Shown: positions 45,890 through 62,196, numbered from the whole stretch's first letter. The stretch: 63,693 nt of DNA, filler included, from Octopus bimaculoides (GCF_001194135.2; 5 parts of 4 records of this genome joined end to end with filler, not necessarily neighbours in it); one strand, 5' to 3'. The notes: generated by a model not told the origin, from the sequence alone. Made by a program: numbers and translations.

Positions 45890-47904
45890 CTGGAGAGAGA
45901 GAGAAAGAGAAAAAAAATTAGGTGAGATTTTTCAAATTTGATAGTTGCACGTAAGAGACAGCAATGGGCGTGTCTCGGGATATTACATCGCCCTCAGTAC
46001 ATGACTGGTACTTATTTTATCGACCCCGAAAGAAGAAAAAGCCAAGTCGACTTCGGCAGAATTTGTTCGCTATATTTATATATCAGCATAATATAGTTTA
46101 ACAACGCTCACTAATCAATTAAATATTGCTTTCATATTTTAGCACAAAGTCAGCAATATCGGGGGTGGGGTGGGGGGCAAATCGATTGCATCGACCCCGA
46201 AAGGATGAAAGATAAAGCCGACCTCAGCAGAATTTGAACTCTGAACGTAAAGATGGACGAAATGCCGCTAAGCATTTCGCCCGGAGTGTTTAACGATTCT
46301 ACCAGCTAGCCGCCTTTATTTTTAGATATTCTTTTCTACTCTAGGCACAAGGCCCGAGATTTTTAGGGAGGGGGCCAGTCGATTAGATCGACCCCAGTAC
46401 GCAACTGGTACTTAATTTATCAACCCTGAGAGGATGAAAGGCAAAGCCGACTCGGTGGAATTTGAACTCAGAACGTAAAGATAGACGAAATACCTATTTC
46501 TTTATTAGGCATAAAGCCCTAAACATAGATGGGGAGAACCACAAGAACAGACAAGACCATAGTGGGGACAAAAAACATAAAAACGAAAGTAAATGAGATG
46601 AAAGTTATATAAAAATGAAAAAATGAATATTGACGCATGGGCATTAGCATTTGAACCGTTATATGGATTATCTACAATTTTTCTTTTTTTTCCCCTTTAA
46701 TTTCATACTTTTTTTTTTGTCTTTAGTAGAACTTCATCAATGGTTCGATATCTCTTAAATTCACCAGTGGTGGCAACTCTTTAAATTCCACCTCCACACA
46801 CTTCTTTCAACTTTCTGTAGTTTTCCTCTTCGATCGATATTGCCTTCATATCCTTCGCGTAGACGTATGAAGGCACCTTCACTCTTACTATTGAATGAAA
46901 CTTGATTATCTTTTTCTCTGTTTCAACATTTTTGGGGTACGTCGCAAGATACCATACTCCATCTTCTTTCCTTTCTCTTGGATTTTTGGTTTTCTCTTTT
47001 CTTCCTCCATAAATAGTCTCTTCATCTCACCTTCATGCAGTTGGGTTTCTGACTTTCTCCTTCTTACTGCCCTCCTTTCACAGTTTCTTTTCCGGCTGAG
47101 AACTCATTCTTTTCTTTTTAACCATAGTGAATCCCTTCGCCGTTTCTTTTTCTGTTGCTTTGTTCCTGCCAGCTCACTGCCTTCTTTATTTTTAAATATT
47201 GAAAGAGATGCGAATAATTTTTGGCTGATGTAATTTGCTTAAGTTCTTTTATTCATTTGACTGCGGTCATGCTGGAGCACCGTTTTTAGTCGAACAAATC
47301 GACCCCCAGGACTTATTCTTTGTAAGCCTAGTATTTATTGTATCGGTTTCTTTTGCTGAACCGACAAGTTACGGGGACGTAAACACACCACCATCAGTTG
47401 TCAAGCGATGGCGGTGGTGGGGAAACAGAAATATATACGGGCTTCTTTCAGTTTCCGTTTACCAAATCCACTCACAACACTGGTCGACCGGGTATAGAAG
47501 ACACTTGCTTAAGGTGTCACTGAGTGGGACTGAACCAGGAACCATGTGGCTGCTAAGCAAGCTTCTTTCCACACAGCCACACCTGCACCTAAATTAAAGA
47601 AATAAAATGGGGGAAACAACTTAAATGCGCCATTGGCTTTAACTTGGATAGCTAGAAGCTGATGCACTGTATGTCGTATGTGAAGTCTGGTATACCGAAA
47701 CATCTTACATAATTGTCCCTCGACAGCAAATATGTACAAGGAAAGCCTTTCCAGGGATCAATTCCTTATTTCTTGAAATTATCTCTCCTCCTCTTTTCAG
47801 TGTCGCTAGTTTTCGTTTTGTTTTTCCACACGAAAGTTAAATTTTAAGCATCTTAGGATTTCTTGCGTGCAATATTCAGTACATCAAATCTTTATGCGAG
47901 TTAT

Positions 47905-49041: not shown

Positions 49042-51247
49042 GTAAGGAGAAAAAGATATTGCCAACCTGAAATATATATACATATATATTCAAATAACAA
49101 ATGAAATACAGATGGAATATACGAGATTTTATTATTAATAACGACAGTTGTTTCGACACATCTAGCATCGATTCCTCTTGGGTGGGACACTCAACAGGTT
49201 CAGGAGTAGCCGGTGGTGCAGATGTATCTCGTCAGGTGATAAATAAACTTGTTAAAAAGACTGTTCCACAATGTAACTTTCCGTTTTGTAGAGAGAAAAA
49301 CAGCCAGACGAAGGAAATATCTTCATTTATATAGATCAAAAGTAAAATCACAGATGACAAAAAGAGAAATGAACACACAATCCAGCGAGAAAAGTATATA
49401 TTTATATACACACACAACAGGCTTCTTTCAGTTTCTGCCTTCCAAATCCATTAAGACTCTTGTCCAAGACACTACTCAATGGGTTTGAACCCCAAAATTT
49501 GTGGTTGGGAAGTGAACTTCCTAACCACACATCCATACCTGTGCATGTATAAAGAAAACAATTCAACACAACATTCTTAATAAGAAAATAATAAAACCAT
49601 TTAAGAGTCTTTGTAGAGTAGCAATGGCAAGAGCAAATATTTTAATTTCAGATTTCTGAATAACCAAAGTTGAACAAAACCAAACCAAAAATATTTTCAA
49701 CAAATTCACAATTTTCTTCAAATTGAGACAATGTCAAATCGGGAAATATTGTATTTTTGCATGGAGGATTATTTCATATTCTTTTCATGTATCATTTTAA
49801 AAACTGAATCCTGAAAAGGGTTTATGAATAAATCCCCGTCTATCACTTAAACATTTCTACTTTTCTAGAAGTTGGAAAACCAGATGTAAAGAAATGCCAT
49901 ACATCTCTCTGAATCATCAGCCAACAGTAGTTGGATATGACTATTTAGTTTAAAAAGTACCCATACTGGCCATTTTTTCATAGTAATAGACTACTTGGAA
50001 TGAATGTTCAATAAAAGTTTTAGGTAATCACTTTATGATGTTAGATTTATATTAAAACATTATTGCTCATGCTTATAATTTACTAAATTATTAAGAAAAT
50101 TCAAAAAGATCAAAGTTTCAAAACGTTTTGAATTAGTTACATTCTCAGTTGTTTTGCATCATTGAGAAGCAATTTGCTGAGTTGATAGTATGTTAGCATA
50201 ATGACCAAAAGTTCATAATTCTTTTCAGCACTTCACTTCAGGTTGAATCTAGGCTACCTTGTAAATAGAGGTTTACATTCAGCAATGCCTAGATAACAGT
50301 GCAGAGTTTAAATCTTACAGAGATCATGGAAGAAACAATTAATTATCCAACTTCAAAAACTGACACTTTGCAGTGCTGAAAATTATGGGACTAAAGGCCA
50401 TCAAAACTACAGAACAAAAGAAATGACTACCAATGTTATATGATCTTACTGCATTCAATTGTATTGTTTTGGGTTAAGTCAAAGCAAATACTAGCAAACC
50501 AAGCAATGGTTTGCTAGTAATAGGTGATGTACCAAGCTGTACGGTTTGAATCCATGACCATCTAGAAAGTCAAATAGAAAAACAATTGTTCTAAAATAGC
50601 AATTTTAATTAAATAGTAACTTTTGTTGGGTAATTATTCTCCAATAAGCAAAACTGATTAAAAACTGTTACAAACATAACAAAACATTTGATGAAGTAAA
50701 CAAACAAACATACGTAGAGAATATTTATTAATAGAATATTTATATTATAAATAATTTTTATAATAGAGATAGGAGGAGGGGGAAAAGAAAGAGGAAAGGA
50801 AGAAATTAAGAGAGCTGGAATTGAGATAATGTTTGTCAGCAATGGCACCAATAAGCCGGTCTTCTTTAAGATTCTCTACATAATAGTAAATTGATTTCTT
50901 TCTTTTACAAATGGTTCAAAAGTCAGTAGAGAAGCCATCCAAGGCACATGGACCAATGAGTTAAGTGCCATTGAGATGTCATCCACCATGTAAAAGCATC
51001 GTGATTTATTTAACCAACCTATTTAAATGTACAAGTTCATTTATTGTTCCAGTTTGCATGCTCCATCAAACAGCAGTGAAGGTGACGTCAATGTGGGAAA
51101 ATACAAAAGTCAGATACCCTGCACCACAAGCACCACCACCAATACTGTTTTTTAAACTTTCTATCATGCTGACAGTATCAAATTAATTATTAAGTAGCAA
51201 TCTATAGCCACAGCCAATGGACCAGGGGCACACACATCAGATATTTC

Positions 51248-51355
51248 TTACATAAAGTCTTCTGCAAAATCATCATAGCGTATATCATCTAAGTCATTTT
51301 CTTTACCAAACTTTATAGATGCTTTAGTTTTCTTTTTCTTCTTTTTCTCATTTTC
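51248..51355 (-). CDS. EIF3J: eIF3 subunit J, terminal coding exon
   Basis: ctctttttag| then ENEKKKKKKTKASIKFGKENDLDDIRYDDFAEDFM*: Lys run and acidic xDFM end typical of eIF3j. Confidence 0.93.
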   Translation of the reverse strand, partial: ENEKKKKKKTKASIKFGKENDLDDIRYDDFAEDFM

Positions 51356-51967
51356 CTAAAAAGAGGAGAGAAAAAAAAAACACTAAAATAAAATGCTGCT
51401 TCAAAAAATACTATTAGACAAACTAGGATTACTATTTTGAAAATAACATAACAGGCAAATGCATGGCTGTGTGGTTATACACACACATACATGTAAGTAT
51501 GTTAGTGTCTGCAATGACACTGCTTGTGGTAATGTTGCCCATACCTGCTGTAAACAAGTCTGATACATTTATCATTTGACATACAAAGATGTAGAATAAA
51601 GTCCCTTACTTGAACACAAGGGTTGGCGTCAGAAAGGGCACCTATAGTACTGCCACAAGAAATCTCATCCAACACATGCCAGCATGAAAAAATCAGATGT
51701 AAAAGCGTTGATGAAACTCCTTAAAATGTTTATGCAAAACACTATTTATAAAGCAAATAACAGCAAGTCTTAAGCAGTAATCATTGTATTTAAGTCATTT
51801 ACTTTACAGCTCTCATTACTACGTTTTTAGAGGAGTTAGAATTGTGGTATTAATGTGCAAAGTGACTTGAAAACTAATACTACAATTCTAACACATCTAA
51901 AAATATTGCTGCTTTAGTTGGTTAAAGACTAGTTAAATCATATTAAATTCTAAATTAGAATATTTAC

Positions 51968-52041
51968 CTTTTGTTGTTTCAGTTTTTCATGGTACATACT
52001 GCTAAGTGATGCATTAATTTTTCTAATTTCATCAGATTCAA
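51968..52041 (-). CDS. EIF3J: eIF3 subunit J, 74-nt exon
   Basis: ag|tt-ESDEIRKINASLSSMYHEKLKQQK|gtaaat, phase 1-0. Matches eIF3j LEIDDLKKITNSLTVLCSEKQKQEK. Confidence 0.93.
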
Positions 52042-52333: not shown

Positions 52334-52391
52334 CATTAATAATAAGGTCTGTAAATAGCTTGTCTAAAAATGCTGTATAGTGTGGTGATTT
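52334..52391 (-). CDS. EIF3J: eIF3 subunit J, 58-nt exon
   Basis: ctctctctcaccag| KSPHYTAFLDKLFTDLIIN+g |gtaatt, phase 0-1. Matches eIF3j KSLYYASFLEVLVRDVCIS. Confidence 0.92.
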
Positions 52392-53348: not shown

Positions 53349-53449
53349 CTCAAATGTTGTTATCTTTTCTTTTAATGCTTCTTCAAATTTTATAAAATCT
53401 TCTTCTGATTCTGGACTCATTTGGTCAATACCAGCTCCCTCCACTAATC
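53349..53449 (-). CDS. EIF3J: eIF3 subunit J, 101-nt exon
   Basis: ctctgttttag| (G)LVEGAGIDQMSPESEEDFIKFEEALKEKITTFE |gtaata, phase 1-0. Matches GIDAMNPSSRDDFTEFGKLLKDKITQYE. Confidence 0.95.
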
Positions 53450-54342
53450 CTAAAACAGAGAAATGATGTTTAGTTGAATTAACTAAAAACCAGTTAACAA
53501 CATCATCTCTCCCCAACAAAATATTTTAAATTATGGCAAAATTGCTTTTATGATTGAAAAATTTATTAAAACTTGCACAAGTGTTTAAGTCTATGACACA
53601 GAAAAACCAGGAAGGATATGAGAAAAAAATTGTGGTGTAAAATCTTACAATGTTGGGTATTACTTGAGATGATAGCAGATTGAGATGAATGGCCATTTGC
53701 TAGACTTCAGGCATGTCTAAACTCATGGAAAAATGAACATGAAAATATTAAGTGTTAGCTATATGTATATATATATATATTCATAATTGCTTTTAAATCA
53801 AAATGTAGTTTGCACTTTTAATCAAAAGGCAACTTGTGCTTGAGGAAATTGTTAAAAAAAAAATTTTTTAAAGAAAAAATGAGAGATATGCAACTTCCTA
53901 TGTAATTCAATGAGAGGTTTCTTGTCAACAAGTCCAGTCATGCCTTTATGAAAAGTTAAATTGTTTTTTACATGCTGAAAAAAACTAGGATGCTGTCAGC
54001 TGACAAATGGTTTGCAAATGTTGCCCTCTGGATGCATAAAATGTTAAAACATCATGTTAAATTTCAAGCTACATTTTTACTATTCTTCTAAAAGGACCCA
54101 ATGCAAGCACTAATAGTTAAATACAAATTTTCATGTTTACATAATCCAAACATATTGGTTCAGTACACTGCTTTCGATGATTTAGAGAGAAATGTATGTA
54201 CCATGTTTCAAATATTTTATAGAAAAATTAAACATTTTGTATCAGTCAATTCAATTACTGTAACTGTTATTGACAAAACAATGTATTATGCTGCAGAAAC
54301 ATCATCTCACTCAATGTTTTCAGTATTGTGAAATTACTTTAA

Positions 54343-54561
54343 CCCTTTAGCATTTAATCTGGCCTTATCCACCACAATTATTTGAACTGTTTTATGTTAA
54401 AACCGACCAAATTTAATCTCTCACACCTACCCTGCAATGTCATTCTAAAAATAAACAATCACATTGTCAAAATCTCACAGCTAAGAGATAATGCACGATT
54501 AATTCAGAACAATTGAATAAATAAGCATTACATTTGACAAAGAAACCTGAATGCCAATGGT
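54343..54561. mobile_element. TTAA-flanked piggyBac-type MITE (more decayed copy at ~56110-56310)
   Basis: ttaa|ccctttagcatt ... gaatgccaatggt|ttaa. Confidence 0.65.
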
Positions 54562-54781
54562 TTAATAAACAGATTTACGCCAAATCAACTTACATTGCTT
54601 TATACCATAAAGGATTATAATTGAAAATAAATATCTAGTTCACAGAAAGGAAATAGCCTAAACACCCAAACATTTAGTCAAACAAATATTCTAATATGAA
54701 ACAAGATATATAGATCATATAAAAATATTCTCAAGATAATACAATGAAAACTACTAAAAGGCAATTGTTCAATATGTGGTA

Positions 54782-54910
54782 TAATGTTGCACAGTTAGTA
54801 ATCACCAGTAATAACTAATAGTTAGTGGATTACTAACATGTACATTTAATATCCCTGAGCATTACGGCATAACAAATAAGAAAGTAAATGTATGCTGTCA
54901 AAGTCAGGAT
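54782..54910 (-). ncRNA. Box H/ACA snoRNA-like copy A
   Basis: Hairpin tcctga/tcaggg, H box ATATTA (54847-54852), second hairpin, ACA (54785-54787). Confidence 0.65.
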
Positions 54911-55776
54911 CTTTCAAAATTCAAATAAGTTAACCATTGAAGCCTTCACAATGAAATATCTCATAACTATGCACATCCTTATAAATCTTTACGGAAATTT
55001 CTTATTATTGACAATTCAAGCATCATTTTACAATTTAGCACATAAATATTTGACAGTTTGAGTCATTTTTTTGTCTTATACATTCATAGTTAATGACTTA
55101 TGCTACATGACTCAATTTGGGTTTAAGGTAAATTTGAATGTTTTCTTTTTCAGCATGTTGAAAATATTCAAGGAAAATGTCTTAATTTTACGCTAGATGA
55201 CATTTGAAGCACTGGTCGTGAAAATTAAATTGTAAATAAATTTCAGTGTTTTAGAGATTGATGCTAGGACCAACACAAAAACGAGATAAGGCAGAGATCG
55301 ATTTTAAAAAGTACTTCCTTGCAAATATTGTCACCATACACTCTTGCAAATTGTCACCTTACATAAACACCTAGTTTCTCTATCCCCACTTACTCCTACT
55401 CACCTCACACTATTAAGTATCACTTGGATACCTCATCACCAATATCTATCTTTTTGTAGTAACTACAGATTCATTCTCACTCTCTCTTGAATGAGTAGCA
55501 ATTGTAGCTCCTCTACAAAGACCTGCTCTTCCCCAGGTTTTGTACTCTTGTGAGCTGCATGGTTGCCTGTGGTGGTGAGAAAAGCACCCAGTATACATGG
55601 TAACAGGGTTAGTATTGAGAAGGACATCCATGCCCAAGCAGACACTGATAGATGATGCAATCCTTGGATCCATCAGACCCAGCTGAACTGTCCAGATAAT
55701 GCCAGTAAGGAACAGACATTAAACGATGATTATAAGAGACAGGCATATTATTAGCTGTTGGCAACAGAATAAACAA

Positions 55777-55909
55777 ACATGTAGCACAGTTAGTATATAC
55801 CAGTAACAACTAGACTATAACCAGTACATTACTAGCATGTGCATTTACTATCCCTGAACATTCGGCACAACATATATATATAAATATATGTATGGTTCAT
55901 AGTCAGGGC
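55777..55909 (-). ncRNA. Box H/ACA snoRNA-like copy B
   Basis: ccctga...tcaggg, H box ATAGTA (55846-55851), gcaca...tgtgc stem, ACA (55780-55782) plus 3 nt. Length 133 nt. Confidence 0.78.
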
Positions 55910-56796
55910 TTCTCCCCAATTTCAACTTTTGTTAGAAAAGCAGTTTAAAACTTAGCAAAATCTTTTAAGTACATTTCCAATGAAAGACAATGCAAATGAA
56001 TATCAATTTAAATTTTAGATCTACACTATCATTAAATTACTTCATATAATTTATTATCTAAATATGTTTAGCAGGCGGAATTATTATTTCAAAATAATCT
56101 TTTAAAACTTTAGCATTAAACATCTAGTTCAAATATTCTAGCTTTTTTATATTCAAACTTGCCAGACCCAATCTCTTACATTTACCAAATACCATTCTAG
56201 AAGTAATTGCACCATCAAAATCTTGAAGCACCAAGCTAATGCATAATTAATCAAAAACAATGTGAATAAATAAGCATTACATTTAACAAAGTGACTTGAA
56301 TGCTAAAGGGTCAAATATGAAGGAATTCAAGAAACTTTTATAATGAAAGATTAATCTTCTAGTGTTTAAAGAGACAATTCTCTCCTGTGTATTTAGAATC
56401 AATATTTCATACACAGTTCAATCAAATAAGAAATCAGTAGCCATTTCTTCGAGCTACTATCAAAATTAAAGGGACATGATAATACCAAATATATTTACTA
56501 GATCCTCTAGCAGTATAAAGTTAAAATAAGGAACATTCATTTATGAAAAGAGGTATTCTACAGGCTAAATAAAAAGTTAGCTAAAACCAGATGATTCATG
56601 AATTACATAATCATGTTCAAAAGATTAATCCATAGAATATCTAAATTGGTTTTACACACCCTACGTACTGTAAAAGAAAACTGAATTTTAAAGTTTACAT
56701 ACAAAATTTACCCAATATAAAGCAACAAGGTCGAGGGAAGGATTACAGTAAAACTCACAAGCCAATCAACAATATGTCAACACATGATAATATTAT

Positions 56797-56921
56797 CATG
56801 TACTGACAAACATTGAGTAGTCACCAGTAACAACTAGAATATATCCAGTAGATTACTAGTAAATGCACTTATTATCTCTAAACTACACAACATAATATCT
56901 GTGTGCTCTCAAAGTCAGGGA
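56797..56921 (-). ncRNA. Degenerate H/ACA snoRNA-like copy C
   Basis: H box ATAATA (56870-56875) retained, but deletions affect hairpin 1 and the lower stem before ACA. Confidence 0.45.
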
Positions 56922-57379
56922 TTTTTCAACAAATTTTATAACTGACTTTATGCTGCCAAGACCCACACAAAAATGAGATAAGATTTTGAAGAGTAGTTTT
57001 CCCAAACAGATGTATAAAAAATACAGCAGTCCAATAGAAAATGGTATGACACCATTAAAGAAATGAAAGCCATTCTTTTATGTACTATGAGATGGAAAAA
57101 TATCTATTTGGAAATAGGTGAAGCTGTAGAAAATTTGTGCCAATGTATTTTTGCAGGACCCATGCTTGCGTGGGTCCTGCAAAATAGGACAAATTCATGC
57201 AATAAAAAGCTTCTAGACAGCAACTACAAGGGTTAGTACCAGAAAAAACTGCTGCAAAAATTTCCATTGAAACCATAACATGGAAAAGGCATAAAAATGA
57301 TGATGAAAAAAGAAGAGATTCTATAATAAACCAATACAGATGGTCATAATATTACCTGCTGACAACAGAATAAAAAAAT

Positions 57380-57444
57380 ACATGTAGCACAGTATATATA
57401 CCAGTAACAATTAGAATATAACCAGTAGATTACTAGTATGTGCA
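57380..57444 (-). ncRNA. H/ACA snoRNA-like copy D (3' half, truncated by gap)
   Basis: tgtgctACAtg at 57383-57385 and second hairpin. Confidence 0.65.
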
Positions 57445-58161
57445 NNNNNNNNNNNNNNNNNNNNNNNNNNNNNNNNNNNNNNNNNNNNNNNNNNNNNNNN
57501 NNNNNNNNNNNNNNNNNNNNNNNNNNNNNNNNNNNNNNNNNNNNNNNNNNNNNNNNNNNNNNNNNNNNNNNNNNNNNNNNNNNNNNNNNNNNNNNNNNNN
57601 NNNNNNNNNNNNNNNNNNNNNNNNNNNNNNNNNNNNNNNNNNNNNNNNNNNNNNNNNNNNNNNNNNNNNNNNNNNNNNNNNNNNNNNNNNNNNNNNNNNN
57701 NNNNNNNNNNNNNNNNNNNNNNNNNNNNNNNNNNNNNNNNNNNNNNNNNNNNNNNNNNNNNNNNNNNNNNNNNNNNNNNNNNNNNNNNNNNNNNNNNNNN
57801 NNNNNNNNNNNNNNNNNNNNNNNNNNNNNNNNNNNNNNNNNNNNNNNNNNNNNNNNNNNNNNNNNNNNNNNNNNNNNNNNNNNNNNNNNNNNNNNNNNNN
57901 NNNNNNNNNNNNNNNNNNNNNNNNNNNNNNNNNNNNNNNNNNNNNNNNNNNNNNNNNNNNNNNNNNNNNNNNNNNNNNNNNNNNNNNNNNNNNNNNNNNN
58001 NNNNNNNNNNNNNNNNNNNNNNNNNNNNNNNNNNNNNNNNNNNNNNNNNNNNNNNNNNNNNNNNNNNNNNNNNNNNNNNNNNNNNNNNNNNNNNNNNNNN
58101 NNNNNNNNNNNNNNNNNNNNNNNNNNNNNNNNNNNNNNNNNNNNNNNNNNNNNNNNNNNNN

Positions 58162-58280
58162 GTATATATACCAGTAACAATTAGAATATAACCAGTAGAT
58201 TACTAGTATGTGCATTTACTATCCCTAAACATTACGGCATAACAAATAAGAAAATATATGTATGCTGTCAAAGTTAGGGG
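58162..58280 (-). ncRNA. H/ACA snoRNA-like copy E (3' end in gap; may be the same copy as D)
   Basis: ccctaa...ttaggg stem and H box ATAGTA (58217-58222). First 53 nt are identical to 57392-57444. Confidence 0.7.
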
Positions 58281-58823
58281 TTTTTCTCCCCACCAAATTT
58301 CAATATTTGTCAGAAAAAGTTTAAAACTTAAGAGCAAAATCTGTTATTCTAATGAGTGACAATTTATGTTCCACATTAACATTCAATGACTTCATATTGC
58401 ATACGAAGGATTCAAGGATATCTTTATAATGAAAGAGAGTTTGTTTTTTCATTCACAATTATCATAGGGCTAAGAATTAATACTCTAGTGAAATCAATAA
58501 CCACTTCTTTAAACTAAAATGAAAGACACTCTGTTAGGATAAACAAGAAATGAAAAGAAAGAAATATTCATTTAGAAAAAATATTCCACTAGTTAAATAG
58601 AAAATATTAGCTAACACAAGACAATCCATGGATGACATATCTTGAAAAGATTTTCCATTGAGTATCTAGTTTGTTTTTACACACCCTATGTATTGTAATA
58701 AAATCAAATTTAAAGTTTACATAAAGAAATTTACCCAATATAAAAACTATAATAAAGAAGCAATAAAATCCACAAGAAAACAATCAATATGTATCAGTAC
58801 ATGGTAATACTATGCAGTGACAA

Positions 58824-58942
58824 ACATGTAGCACAGTGAGTAGTAACAACTAGAATATACCCAGTAGATTACTAGCAAGTGCATTTAATATCCCTAAACT
58901 ATACGACATAACAAAATATTTGTATGCTCTCAAGGTCAGGGT
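58824..58942 (-). ncRNA. H/ACA snoRNA-like copy F
   Basis: ccctga/ttaggg, H box ATATTA (58886-58891), ACA (58827-58829). Short deletion in hairpin 2. Confidence 0.6.
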
Positions 58943-59873
58943 TTCTTTCAACAATTGGACTTATGATAAATTTGATTGTATTTTTCTTTCAGCATGTTGA
59001 AAACAGAGAGAAAATATTGTTTTACTGAAGAGGACACAAAGTAATGGTAGTGGAAATGAAACTGAAAATAAAGAAATTTATGCTAACAAATGAAGCAGTT
59101 GATATAATATAAATATTCCAGCGTTTTAAAAAATGATGCCAGGACACACAAAAAAGTAAGATAAGGCAGAAGTAAATTTAAAAAAATACATCTCTCTTTG
59201 AACATCCACAGGAAATTATGGTTAAAGAGTCAAACATACTAGATAATTAGAACAGACAGCACTCCAACAGAAAAAAGGTATGAAGCCATTCAAGAAATGA
59301 AAGCTTTTCTTGTATGAATAATGAAAGTGTAATACCCCAATTCCAACATATGAACCCTATTATTAAAAAAATATTTTACAAAGAGATTGTGTTTAGTCTT
59401 TCATAACGGCCATAAGGCAAATGCCTAAATTTGTATAGGACTAGGGAGATAAATGTCTACTGTATGGTGCAATATTTCATATATTTTATTAATGAATGAA
59501 CTTTCTAGCATAAACAGTACTAAATAATCAGACAAATATTTCTTAAAAGACACGATTATTACCAAACCCATTAATAGTACAGAGAAGAAATGAAAATAAA
59601 TATGCAGCTATAACAAAAAATAAGTTAAGTATTTAAATAGCTTGATAGAAATTAATTTACTGACCAAATAATAAAAGTTAGATACCACAAAACTAATATA
59701 TTAGGTGCAGGAATGGCTGCAAGGTTAAAAAGTTTGCTTCCCATTACACAGCAACTGGTTAAATTCCACTACATGGTACCTTAGCGTCTTCAACTGTAGC
59801 TCTGGTATGACCAAAGCCTTGTGAATGGCTTTGTTAGGTGGAAATTGAAAGCAACCAGTCATATATAAATATA

Positions 59874-60679
59874 CTAGCAGAGATATATGTCATTGCTCGG
59901 GATTAAAATGGCATAGTTTTTTTATTGTTTTACCTGTTCCGATCATGTGACTGCAGCCATGCTGGAGCACCACATTTAGTCGAAGAAATCGACCCCAGGA
60001 TTTATTCTTTGTAGGCCTAGTACTTTATTGATGTGTATGTATATATATATATGTATTGATAGAAAAGGTAAGACAACAAAAGAAAGAAAGAGACCTCAAT
60101 ATTATGTAAATAGAGGAATTTATCTGCAAGTAATATGTGACAATTATTCGGTAGCCATAATAAAACTCTGAGTTTCGGATGTTGGGGTGGAAACCCACAC
60201 TGTCATCTCTTCAGTTATCTGGCCATCGAAAAAATGCTATGAAAATGACCGTTAAAGGGAAATTACTGTGTGAATCACCATTATTAAGACAAAAGACCTA
60301 TTAGAATGACCGCTAAGTGAGGAGAGGGAGTAAAAATGTCCTTAGTATTCACGTAAGCACACCCACATACATGTGCCTATATGTATATACACATCCACCC
60401 TCACTTTCGGATCATATTCACATGTAGCTAAATATTTGAAACTATTATCTCACACTACAATAGATGTTATTGTTTCACTTTTTGACACATAATACCGAAA
60501 CGGGCTAAAAGATTGCTCCAGACTTGCATTAGGCAAGAAGGTGAAAATTTTTTTAGCCCATGACACTCCATGGACCCTATGTAGTGTATGCGTAAAATTT
60601 GAATGAAATTGGTTTGGTAGTTCTTCAGTTTTAGTGATACACACATACAGACACACATTCTCAGCTTTATATATATAGA
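59874..60679 (-). mobile_element. Non-autonomous Helitron with both termini
   Basis: 5' a|TCtatatatataaagctgag, 3' atcccgagcaatgacatatatctctgCTAG|t, inserted between A and T. Contains nested repeat fragments. Confidence 0.7.
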
Positions 60680-61031
60680 TATCCTCACAACTTTGTCTAT
60701 ATGTTCTCATGTACTGACACATATCAAGCCAAAGAGAAATATATTTGGAAACAGGCAAGCGTTGATTACTGGATAGGCATGTCTTGTACAAAATCTGCCA
60801 TGATGAAATTTATGTAATCCATGCAGGCATGGAAAAGAGGTTAATGAATGAATAAGATAAATATATGTAATATAAAGCTTTTAGACTGCAACTACAAGGG
60901 CTAGAACCACAAAACACTGCCTCAAAAACTTCTATTGGAACCATGACAACATAGAAAAGCAAACAAAAATGATGATGAAAAATAATGAAGGTTCTATAAT
61001 AAAGCAATACAGATGGCAACAGCATAAACAA

Positions 61032-61164
61032 ACATGTAGCACAGTTAGTATATACCAGTAACAATTAGATCATAGCCAGTAGACTACTAGCATGTGCATT
61101 TACTATCCCTGAACACACGGCACAACATATATGTATAAATATATGTATGGGTTAAAGTTAGGGT
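61032..61164 (-). ncRNA. H/ACA snoRNA-like copy G
   Basis: ccctaa/tcaggg, H box ATAGTA (61101-61106), gcaca/tgtgc stem, ACA (61035-61037). Length 133 nt. Confidence 0.75.
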
Positions 61165-62196
61165 TTTTCTTTTCCTTCCAATTTCAATATTTTTTGGAAA
61201 AACAGTTTAAAACTTTGATTAACAGCAAATTCTTTCAAGTATATTCCCACCGAATAGCAATGCAAATGGATTATTAGTTTAAATTCTAATTCCACACTAA
61301 ATTACTTCATATTTGTTTTATTAATTAATGATGTGTTCTGTAGAAGAAATCTATTTCTTCTATTCAAAAATATTTCCTAGACCCTCTGTCAGTATGAAAA
61401 ATGAAAATAAGAGAGATTCATTGAAGCTAAAAATATTCAACAGGATAAATATGGCAAATCATGGATCACTTGCTGATTTTCAAAAAATTAATCCATTGAG
61501 TATCTAATTTCATTTTACTCAGTCTCTATTGTGATGAACTTAAATATTACAAAGAGAAATTACCCAATATAAAAACTATAACAAACTGAGGGAGAAATAT
61601 TATATTTGGAAACAAGCATGTGTTGATGACAGGATAGGCGACTTTTGTAGAAAATCTGCCACAATGAACTTTATCTAATCCATGCAGGCATGGAAAAGAT
61701 GTTAAAATNNNNNNNNNNNNNNNNNNNNNNNNNNNNNNNNNNNNNNNNNNNNTTAATTAATTAANNNNNNNNNNNNNNNNNNNNNNNNNNNNNNNNNNNN
61801 NNNNNNNNCTGAATGCATGTGTATCGGCGTGTGTACGTACGTGCTGTTTGTGTTGTGCAGTCTTGTGTTGTACAGTTGTATAACATGCCTCTGTTAATAC
61901 ATGTGACTGTACGCATTTGGGACTGTGTGTGTGTGTTTAGCTTCTGTTACAAATGCGTTACACCGTTTTATCTTACTAAGTGTGACACACCATCTTGTGT
62001 TTGTATCTGCGTATATCTATATAAATGAGTATTGTAGGACACACGTGTGTTAAACCGTCGTATATTTTCTTGTATCACAGCTATACACATACTCTCACAT
62101 ATATGTATACACACGCATACTCACACACCCACCCACACACACACACANNNNNNNNNNNNNNNNNNNNNNNNNNNNNNNNNNNNNNNNNNNNNNNNN

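What the first reader, a model, noticed from the sequence alone, without database searches (positions are those of the whole stretch)
54782..61164. Tandemly amplified box H/ACA snoRNA cluster upstream of the eIF3j exons, probably in one intron
Six to seven ~130-nt copies, all sense to eIF3j, show the hairpin-H-hairpin-ACA layout. The H box varies only at N positions (ATAGTA, ATATTA, ATAATA = ANANNA). The ACA sits one base after a gcaca/tgtgc or similar stem in five copies. The basal stem shows a compensatory change (ccctga/tcaggg versus ccctaa/ttaggg). The core is the only sequence shared by all copies. Translation-factor genes are established snoRNA hosts, but I know of no eIF3j-hosted snoRNA, and many paralogues in one intron departs from the usual vertebrate one-per-intron pattern. 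It would need endonucleolytic or unusual processing, or hidden non-coding exons. This is the best candidate for an undescribed system here.
Basis: partly seen in the sequence, partly recalled or inferred. Interest (0 to 1): 0.85.

Follow-up and report, generated by a model that had tools for sequence, protein, structure and literature searches.

The report
Probable H/ACA snoRNA array in eIF3j intron
One long intron of the translation-factor gene eIF3j in this cephalopod-like genome holds six diverged tandem copies of a ~130-nt element that looks like a box H/ACA small nucleolar RNA and seems to be kept by selection, but no stable RNA, target or known family could be shown, and many such RNAs in one intron is already known from flies and rice.

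Summary
There are six copies, not seven: an RNA contig bridges the assembly gap, so the two half-copies beside it are one copy. All six lie on the minus strand, sense to eIF3j, inside one intron of at least 8.2 kb.

Five copies keep hairpin, ANANNA, hairpin, ACA at 118-132 nt. A simple detector finds only these five on either strand, against 0.125 per shuffled piece. Random substitutions at the observed levels keep this layout in 2-20% of trials. Stem columns change less than loop columns. One-sided stem changes keep pairing in 18 of 28 cases, against 24% expected. DNA depth gives roughly ten to twenty copies in the genome, so this is not a dispersed transposon.

Against a working guide RNA:
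- No Rfam family matches.
- No rRNA target rises above a control.
- The 5' pocket arms differ between copies.
- The 3' hairpin has no canonical pocket.
- Classical covariation rests on two pairs.
- Available RNA data show only intron-level cover.

Best reading (about 0.6): a lineage-specific, probably orphan H/ACA snoRNA-like family amplified as an alternating A/B repeat. Several H/ACA snoRNAs in one intron is described for Drosophila and rice, so this would be a new member of a known kind.

The parts
54782..54909 (-). Copy c1 (B-type flanks), 128 nt. Basal stem strand 54904-54909, H box AUAUUA 54847-54852, ACA 54785-54787.
   Evidence: Passes the H/ACA detector (E1 -13.9, E2 -19.7). Its hairpin-1 pocket arms, CUUUGACA and CGUAAUGC, match those of c4 except for the last base.
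55777..55908 (-). Copy c2 (A-type), 132 nt. Basal stem strand 55903-55908, H box AUAGUA 55846-55851, ACA 55780-55782.
   Evidence: Best-folding copy: -39.0 kcal/mol on the minus strand against -30.6 on the plus strand. The pocket has 8+8 nt and lies 14 nt from the H box. The 51-nt unitig 55759-55809 has about 9x DNA depth.
56796..56920 (-). Copy c3 (B-type), degenerate. H box AUAAUA 56870-56875. The basal stem has a C-A mismatch, the 3' pocket arm is shortened, and ACA (56799-56801) lies 8 nt from the stem.
   Evidence: It fails the detector. In a related species its core is no better conserved than the flanks. Probably a pseudogene.
57380..57444 (-). Copy c4 (A-type), 3' half: hairpin 2 and ACA 57383-57385.
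   Evidence: It continues directly at 58215 once the false gap is removed.
57445..58214 (.). Assembly artefact: 717 N plus a duplicated 53-mer (58162-58214 equals 57392-57444). Not genome sequence.
   Evidence: A contig of run X19 spans 57391 to 58162 with 53 letters fitting both sides. Base 58162 (G) matches 57392 and not the other in-edge seen in DNA unitigs.
58215..58279 (-). Copy c4, 5' half: hairpin 1 with the compensated basal stem CCCUAA/UUAGGG (strand 58274-58279) and H box AUAGUA 58217-58222.
   Evidence: The joined copy is 130 nt and passes the detector.
58824..58941 (-). Copy c5 (B-type), 118 nt. Basal stem strand 58936-58941 (G-U variant), H box AUAUUA 58886-58891, ACA 58827-58829. 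A 7-nt deletion removes the 3'-side loop of hairpin 2.
61032..61163 (-). Copy c6 (A-type), 132 nt. Basal stem strand 61158-61163 (one A-C mismatch), H box AUAGUA 61101-61106, ACA 61035-61037.
   Evidence: It is 90% identical to c2 over 156 nt (D3), while their flanks are about 73% identical.
53449..61708 (-). Host intron of eIF3j, at least 8.2 kb, running off the piece. It holds the whole array as an alternating B-A-B-A-B-(TE)-A higher-order repeat.
   Evidence: Splice joints and the loose end at 53454. The upstream exon is absent from the window. Self-comparison of the piece. No joints inside the array.
53349..53448 (-). eIF3j exon just downstream of the host intron. It encodes ...GLVEGAGIDQMSPESEEDFIKFEEALKEKITTFE.
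   Evidence: PF08597, profile positions 138-250 of 250.

Best explanation
The core is a box H/ACA snoRNA-like gene family, specific to this lineage. It has been amplified by unequal crossing-over into an alternating A/B higher-order tandem array inside one long intron of eIF3j.

The units are transcribed as part of the eIF3j pre-mRNA. This is inferred from sense orientation and intron-level RNA cover. Each unit would then be bound co-transcriptionally by the dyskerin/Nop10/Nhp2/Naf1 proteins at its two hairpins and its H and ACA boxes. It would be released by cuts between units followed by exonuclease trimming, as proposed for the intronic H/ACA clusters of Drosophila and rice. That step is inferred from established knowledge and was not tested here.

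Five of the six copies look intact. c3 looks like a pseudogene. Only hairpin 1 has canonical pocket geometry, and no target was found, so the RNAs are best called orphan H/ACA-like.

Shown: the anatomy, the strand, the intron location, a moderate copy number and a structure-preserving substitution pattern.
Inferred: transcription as part of the host, RNP assembly, processing and any pseudouridylation.
For: - Architecture. Five copies show hairpin, ANANNA, hairpin, ACA at 118-132 nt, with ACA one base after the 3' stem.
- Specificity. A generic detector finds only these five on either strand of the piece. Forty dinucleotide shuffles give 0.125 hits per piece.
- Retention. Random substitutions at the observed levels (10-23 per copy) keep the layout in 28% of trials at 8 substitutions and about 2% at 20-24. 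Five of six copies keep it.
- Stem constraint. Paired columns carry fewer substitutions than unpaired ones (0.096 against 0.158, Fisher p = 0.01). One-sided changes in stems keep a standard pair in 18 of 28 cases against 24% expected. All three double changes keep the pair.
- Pairing. 94% of stem cells are paired, against 26-47% when partners are slid.
- Boxes. The H box is invariant except at an N position in all six copies.
- Pocket geometry. The hairpin-1 pocket has 8+8 nt and lies 14 nt from the H box.
- Conservation. Cores are more alike than their homologous flanks. For example c2 and c6 are 89% against 73%, and c2 and c4 are 90% against 73%.
- Strand. The minus-strand RNA folds better in four copies and equally in two.
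- Context. The array is sense and intronic in eIF3j.
- Copy number. Core k-mers reach about 5-10x single-copy depth, against 10^4-10^6 for true dispersed repeats nearby.
- Weak family signal. Three of the eight chance-level Rfam hits on c2 are H/ACA families on the minus strand. One is SNORA50 matched over its full length at 12.3 bits.
Against: - No Rfam family reaches significance.
- Strict covariation is limited to two pairs and is no better than column shuffles. Six related sequences give little power.
- No target in 12 eukaryotic rDNA units exceeds a reversed-sequence control (93 against 95 hits). No hit in conserved rRNA appears under the canonical 13-16-nt rule.
- The hairpin-1 guide arms differ between copies. 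Only c1 and c4 share them.
- Hairpin 2 is the best-conserved part, yet it has only a one-sided loop of 9-11 nt and no canonical pocket. c5 has lost even that loop.
- RNA contigs and raw reads show only low, intron-like cover that scales with DNA copy number. These appear to be ordinary mRNA-type libraries, which would lose a 130-nt non-polyadenylated RNA.
- The selection tests use a consensus as ancestor and treat related copies as independent. Their p-values are therefore optimistic.
Confidence: 0.6

Rival explanations
1. This is a neutral tandem segmental repeat. A roughly 1-2-kb intronic unit was duplicated several times. Its hairpin-rich, AT-rich core happens to contain ANANNA and ACA, and no functional RNA is made.
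For: - No Rfam hit.
- No target.
- The pocket arms are not conserved.
- Only intron-level RNA cover.
- Flanks are duplicated along with the core.
- Covariation is no better than shuffles.
- ANANNA and ACA are common in AT-rich DNA.
Against: - Cores are more conserved than flanks duplicated at the same time.
- Stems change less than loops, and their changes keep pairing far more often than neutral expectation.
- The layout survives in five of six copies, where random substitution keeps it in 2-20% of trials.
- The detector finds nothing else in 15.4 kb on either strand, and shuffles give 0.125.
Confidence: 0.22
2. The functional product is a small RNA cut from the long, nearly closed 3' hairpin. 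This could be miRNA-like or a snoRNA-derived small RNA. The H/ACA-like frame would then be ancestral or only a processing scaffold.
For: - Hairpin 2 is the most conserved part. Its stem has about 20-25 bp and 98% of its cells are paired.
- It lacks a guide pocket.
- There is a weak mir-725-like match at E = 0.5 on 166 nt.
- Tandem intronic amplification is common for miRNA clusters (general knowledge).
Against: - The stem is too short for a canonical Drosha substrate, which needs about 35 bp (established knowledge).
- The apical loop has only about 5 nt, and there is a 9-11-nt one-sided loop.
- The Rfam miRNA matches are at chance level.
- Hairpin 1 and both boxes are also maintained.
- No small-RNA data could be found.
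Confidence: 0.1
3. The core is a fragment of a transposable element, such as a SINE or MITE, that happens to sit in this intron several times.
For: - It is repeated.
- The plus strand begins with TAGCACAGTTAGT, which resembles a tRNA box A at 9 of 11 positions (read directly from the sequence).
- True transposon fragments lie between the copies.
Against: - DNA depth of core k-mers is only about 2-10x single copy, against 10^4-10^6 for real dispersed repeats at 56246-56292 and 59709-60780.
- ARAGORN finds no tRNA-like gene.
- All copies share one strand and a regular alternating order, with flanks duplicated alongside them. That is tandem duplication, not insertion.
Confidence: 0.03

Closest known systems
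[quoted passage not shown] 2004, J Mol Biol 341:669, listed in the references of PMC5932544) and intronic snoRNA clusters in rice (PMC2780460, Background)
   Same: Several snoRNA units, often paralogous, lie in one intron of a Pol II host gene in sense orientation. The mere presence of several units in one intron implies cutting between units rather than simple trimming of a debranched lariat.
   Different: - The animal here is a mollusc and the host is eIF3j.
- The units form an alternating A/B higher-order tandem repeat with further near-identical copies.
- No target or expression is shown here, whereas the fly RNAs were detected experimentally.
Canonical vertebrate intronic H/ACA snoRNAs in translation-related host genes, for example the Rfam families SNORA50, SNORA65 and snR43, the nearest weak hits
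   Same: Size of about 130 nt, hairpin-H-hairpin-ACA layout, a pocket 14 nt from the H box, sense intronic position, and a host from the translation machinery.
   Different: - Vertebrates have one snoRNA per intron.
- Rfam scores here are only 12-13.5 bits against gathering scores of 60-90, so no homology is shown.
- The 3' hairpin has no pocket, and no rRNA target was found.
Tandemly repeated snoRNA arrays such as mammalian SNORD115/SNORD116 (general knowledge)
   Same: Dozens of near-identical orphan snoRNA copies arise from tandem duplication of a larger unit, and copy number varies.
   Different: - Those are box C/D snoRNAs.
- Each sits in its own intron of a repeated non-coding host exon-intron unit.
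- Here no internal exons or splice joints were seen, and the host is a protein-coding gene.

Membership tests
Box H/ACA snoRNA | Two hairpins joined by a hinge and followed by a short tail, about 120-140 nt in animals | tested here: met
   Five of six copies measure 118-132 nt. c3 is degenerate.
Box H/ACA snoRNA | H box ANANNA in the hinge, directly after hairpin 1 | tested here: met
   AUAGUA, AUAUUA or AUAAUA in all six copies. Only the fourth position varies.
Box H/ACA snoRNA | ACA directly after hairpin 2 and 3 nt from the mature 3' end | tested here: inconclusive
   ACA lies one base after the stem in five copies and 8 nt away in c3. The mature 3' end could not be observed.
Box H/ACA snoRNA | An internal pocket with two guide arms, whose top lies 14-16 nt from the H or ACA box | tested here: inconclusive
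   Hairpin 1 meets it: 8+8 nt, 14 nt to the H box. Hairpin 2 does not: a one-sided loop of 9-11 nt, 17 nt or more from ACA, and absent in c5. One working pocket is enough for membership.
Box H/ACA snoRNA | Guide arms complementary to a uridine site in rRNA or snRNA | tested here: not met
   In 12 eukaryotic rDNA units from metagenomes there are 93 hits, against 95 in reversed controls. No conserved hit appears with the 13-16-nt rule. The animal's own rRNA and its snRNAs were not available, so the result fits an orphan or lineage-specific target.
Box H/ACA snoRNA | Accumulates as a stable RNA bound by dyskerin, Nop10, Nhp2 and Gar1 | not testable with these tools
   No small-RNA or size-selected library was found. 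mRNA-type contigs and reads show only intron-level cover.
Box H/ACA snoRNA | Stems maintained in evolution by compensatory or pair-preserving change | tested here: inconclusive
   Pair-preserving changes are in excess (18 of 28 against 24% expected) and stems carry fewer substitutions. The layout also survives divergence. Only two pairs have double changes, and the shuffle control is not exceeded.
Curated Rfam H/ACA families | Score at or above the family's gathering threshold | tested here: not met
   Best scores are 12.3-13.5 bits (SNORA50, snR43, SNORA65) against thresholds of 60-90, with E above 1.
Intronic snoRNA gene cluster (Drosophila and rice type) | Two or more snoRNA units in a single intron, sense to the host gene | tested here: met
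   Six units lie between the exon at 53349-53448 and an upstream exon outside the window. No internal splice joints were seen. This holds only if the units are snoRNAs.
Animal miRNA precursor | A stem of about 35 bp with a flexible apical loop, giving about 22-nt products | tested here: not met
   The hairpin-2 stem has about 20-25 bp, a loop of about 5 nt and a large one-sided loop. Rfam miRNA matches are at chance level. Products could not be tested.
SINE or other dispersed repeat | Hundreds to many thousands of dispersed copies | tested here: not met
   Core depth is about 2-10x single copy, against 10^4-10^6 for neighbouring transposon fragments. No tRNA-like gene was found.

The most novel reading that the evidence does not exclude
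This is an orphan, lineage-specific H/ACA-framed RNA whose selected part is the closed 3' hairpin rather than a guide pocket. Under this reading it was recently amplified to a dozen or more copies in the eIF3j intron, with copy number differing between animals. It would act as something other than a pseudouridylation guide. Examples are a source of small RNAs, or a dyskerin-bound element that couples eIF3j pre-mRNA processing to the supply of H/ACA proteins.
Probability: 0.15. Interest if true: 0.65.

Novelty: new member of a known kind. Interest (0 to 1): 0.4.

Why it matters
No cephalopod snoRNA study turned up in the paper search made here. If confirmed, this would be a previously undescribed H/ACA family in that group and an example outside insects and plants of many H/ACA units processed from one intron. 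It would add eIF3j to the translation-factor genes that host snoRNAs.

The array is young, partly collapsed in the assembly, and may differ in copy number between individuals. That makes it a convenient case for studying how orphan snoRNA families are born and amplified.

A practical point for annotators: the 717-N gap at 57445-58161 and the repeated 53-mer are an assembly error.

Tried and rejected
- Rfam on the whole piece and on c2 alone gave only chance-level hits.
- ARAGORN found no tRNA-like gene.
- Tandem Repeats Finder found no array, because the units are about 0.6-1 kb apart and too diverged.
- The transposon idea was rejected on DNA depth.
- The canonical miRNA idea was rejected on stem length and loop geometry.
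- Target search: 12 full eukaryotic rDNA units were fetched from metagenomes with the 18S 3'-end motif. All plausible pockets of both hairpins of all copies were scanned against them. Hit counts equalled those on reversed rRNA. One visible 8-nt match of the c2 arm to GUUCAUAG was recalled from memory of 28S and was discarded, because the other arm does not fit and other copies do not share it.
- A search for a small-RNA library (word 'miRNA') found none.
- An attempt to reach orthologous introns through the eIF3j protein gave no database hit for the C-terminal 114 aa. An exact-ORF look-up also found nothing.
- Reads from three related species aligned across flanks as well (about 84-96% identity). 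They gave little contrast between core and flank, except c2 at 98.5% against about 90-95% in one species.
- Raw reads of run X36 looked strand-biased in the intron but unstranded in the exons, so no strand claim was made from them.
- Paper searches found no cephalopod snoRNA study and no eIF3j-hosted snoRNA.

Full report
**What is there**

Reading 54500-61708, a repeat search, an alignment and a self-comparison show a 118-132-nt core repeated at about 0.6-2.2-kb spacing. All copies are in one orientation. The candidate RNA is on the minus strand. Its copies are:
- c1: 54782-54909
- c2: 55777-55908
- c3: 56796-56920
- c4: 57380-57444 plus 58215-58279
- c5: 58824-58941
- c6: 61032-61163

Tandem Repeats Finder sees no array because the units are long and diverged.

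**The assembly gap**

The 53 bases on either side of the gap are identical: 57392-57444 equals 58162-58214 (family D2). DNA unitigs break exactly at this shared stretch. They show a second in-edge, but the first base of the right-hand contig (G at 58162) matches the left-hand context.

A 268-nt RNA contig of run X19 then runs 57355-57391 and straight on to 58162-58392, with 53 letters fitting both sides. The two sides are therefore continuous. The 717 N and one copy of the 53-mer are an artefact. There are six copies, not seven.

**The array is a higher-order repeat**

Flanks are shared within two classes. The A-type class is c2, c4 and c6. The B-type class is c1, c3 and c5. The order is B-A-B-A-B-(transposon block)-A.

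Homologous flanks are about 66-82% identical and cores 77-90%. Examples are c2/c6 at 89% core against 73% flank, c2/c4 at 90% against 73%, and c4/c6 at 88% against 82%.

DNA depth shows further copies that are not resolved in the window:
- The c2 unitig 55759-55809 is about 9x single copy in two runs.
- About five more A-type copies carry a different upstream flank (section 5c).
- 61018-61708 is at 3-20x.

True dispersed repeats nearby reach depths of 10^4-10^6 (56246-56292 and 59709-60780). The core is therefore a moderately amplified local family of roughly ten to twenty copies, not a transposon. ARAGORN finds no tRNA-like gene.

**Host gene**

RNA joints with GT..AG on the minus strand define four exons: 53349-53448, 52334-52391, 51967-52041 and a last exon of about 50780-51354. 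Spliced together they read LGLVEGAGIDQMSPESEEDF...DDFAEDFM*. This matches Pfam eIF3_subunit PF08597 at E = 6e-28, profile positions 138-250 of 250.

A contig that continues upstream from 53454 carries ...ESDLKLAKEA. That sequence is absent from the window. No splice joint was seen inside 54600-61708. The whole array therefore lies, in sense, in one eIF3j intron of at least 8.2 kb that runs off the piece.

**H/ACA anatomy**

The RNAalifold consensus and single folds give this layout:
- Hairpin 1 has a 6-bp basal stem, CCCUGA/UCAGGG.
- Above it is an internal loop of about 8+8 nt, then an upper stem and a variable apical loop.
- Next comes AUAnUA.
- After a spacer of three bases (one in c3) comes hairpin 2, with basal stem GCACA/UGUGC.
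- One base later comes ACA.

The top of the hairpin-1 loop lies 14 nt from the H box, which is canonical. Hairpin 2 is a long, almost closed stem with only a one-sided loop of 9-11 nt on its 3' side. c5 has deleted even that. Hairpin 2 therefore has no canonical pocket.

c3 has a broken basal stem and a shortened 3' arm, and its ACA lies 8 nt from the stem. It looks like a pseudogene.

**Is this more than chance?**

- Detector. A generic detector looks for a hairpin ending at ANANNA, followed by a hairpin ending at ACA, within size and energy limits. It finds exactly c1, c2, c4, c5 and c6 on the minus strand and nothing else on either strand of the 15.4-kb piece. Forty dinucleotide-preserving shuffles give a mean of 0.125 hits per piece.
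- Retention. Starting from the consensus, random substitutions keep the layout in 28% of trials at 8 changes, 12% at 12, 5% at 16 and about 2% at 20-24. The copies carry 10-23 changes, and five of six still pass.
- Stem constraint. Substitutions are rarer in paired than in unpaired columns (0.096 against 0.158, p = 0.01). One-sided changes in stems keep a standard pair in 18 of 28 cases, where the spectrum seen in loops predicts 24%. All three double changes keep the pair.
- Strand. The minus-strand RNA folds better than the plus strand in four copies and equally in two. This fits stems that rely on G-U pairs.

There are caveats. The copies share ancestry, the consensus is not the true ancestor, and the structure was derived from the same sequences. 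The nominal p-values are therefore too small.

Strict covariation is weak. Two pairs show double changes, and the score equals the shuffle mean.

**What argues against a working guide**

- Rfam gives nothing significant on the piece or on c2 alone. The weak hits do include SNORA65, snR43 and full-length SNORA50 on the minus strand, at 12-13.5 bits.
- I fetched 12 complete eukaryotic rDNA units from metagenomes and scanned every plausible pocket of every copy. This gave 93 hits on rRNA against 95 on reversed rRNA. With the 13-16-nt rule, no hit fell in conserved rRNA, while the control gave a few.
- The hairpin-1 arms differ between copies. Only c1 and c4 share them (CUUUGACA and CGUAAUG). That pair also shows the tidy pattern of compensated stem changes plus loop changes.
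- The best-conserved part is hairpin 2, which has no pocket.
- RNA contigs from eight runs and raw reads from one show only low, intron-like cover that tracks DNA copy number. These look like ordinary mRNA libraries, which would lose a 130-nt RNA. No small-RNA library could be found.
- Three related species align across both flanks and cores (about 84-96% identity) and so discriminate poorly. c2 is somewhat better kept (98.5% against about 90-95%), and c3 is no better kept than its flanks.

**Most likely mechanism**

The eIF3j pre-mRNA carries the array. H/ACA proteins assemble on each intact unit. Cuts between units and exonuclease trimming then release RNAs of about 130 nt. These steps are inferred from what is known of H/ACA biogenesis and of intronic clusters. 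They were not observed here. The array itself grew by unequal crossing-over of an A+B unit. Near-identical extra copies show that this has happened recently.

**Comparison with what is known**

Several snoRNAs in one intron is a described organisation, the 'intronic gene cluster'. [quoted passage not shown] For H/ACA snoRNAs in particular, see Huang et al. 2004, J Mol Biol 341:669, as listed in the references of PMC5932544.

The arrangement is unusual for vertebrates but not new. What would be new is the family itself, the host gene (no eIF3j-hosted snoRNA turned up) and the animal group (no cephalopod snoRNA study turned up).

**Verdict**

- Observation: confirmed, with six copies and a false gap.
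- Interpretation: partly supported.
- Best explanation: a lineage-specific, probably orphan H/ACA snoRNA-like family in a tandem intronic array, confidence about 0.6.
- Rivals: neutral tandem repeat (0.22), small-RNA-producing hairpin (0.10), transposon fragment (0.03).
- Novelty: new member of a known kind.
- Interest: 0.4.

Noticed in passing
window 57445-58214: The 717-N gap and the 53-mer repeated after it are an assembly error. An RNA contig joins 57391 directly to 58162 (equivalently 57444 to 58215).
   Followed up: yes
window 56246-56292 and 54520-54545: A stretch of about 35-45 nt (ataagcattacatttaacaaag...) has DNA word depth near 10^5, against 20-50 for single-copy sequence. It is also abundant in three related species. 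It is a fragment of a very high-copy dispersed repeat lying between the array units.
   Followed up: partly
window 59709-60780 (related stretch at 47253-47306): A block of high-copy transposon or SINE-like sequence, with DNA depth up to about 10^6, is inserted between c5 and c6. It explains the longer spacing there.
   Followed up: partly
window 61018-61708: DNA depth is 3-20x single copy over core and flanks, and 61592-61705 repeats 60734-60844. More near-identical array units are collapsed in the assembly or lie beyond the end of the piece.
   Followed up: partly
window 55759-55809: This c2-specific unitig is about 9x single copy in two DNA runs but only about 2x in a third run under the same species label. 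The array's copy number may differ between animals.
   Followed up: no
window 57149-57184: A near-perfect 36-nt palindrome (gcaggacccatgcttgcgtgggtcctgc) lies in the A-type flank upstream of c4. Its only Rfam match is a chance-level miRNA hit.
   Followed up: no
window 51354-51967 and 53448-53648: eIF3j has minor splice forms. One uses an extra exon at about 51609-51678. Another has a joint from 53448 to 53648, supported by about a fifth of the reads of the main joints.
   Followed up: no
window 49395-49416 and 53760-53780: TA-rich simple sequence at these two places produces many spurious 'joints' and opposite-strand joins in the RNA reads. These are not splicing.
   Followed up: no
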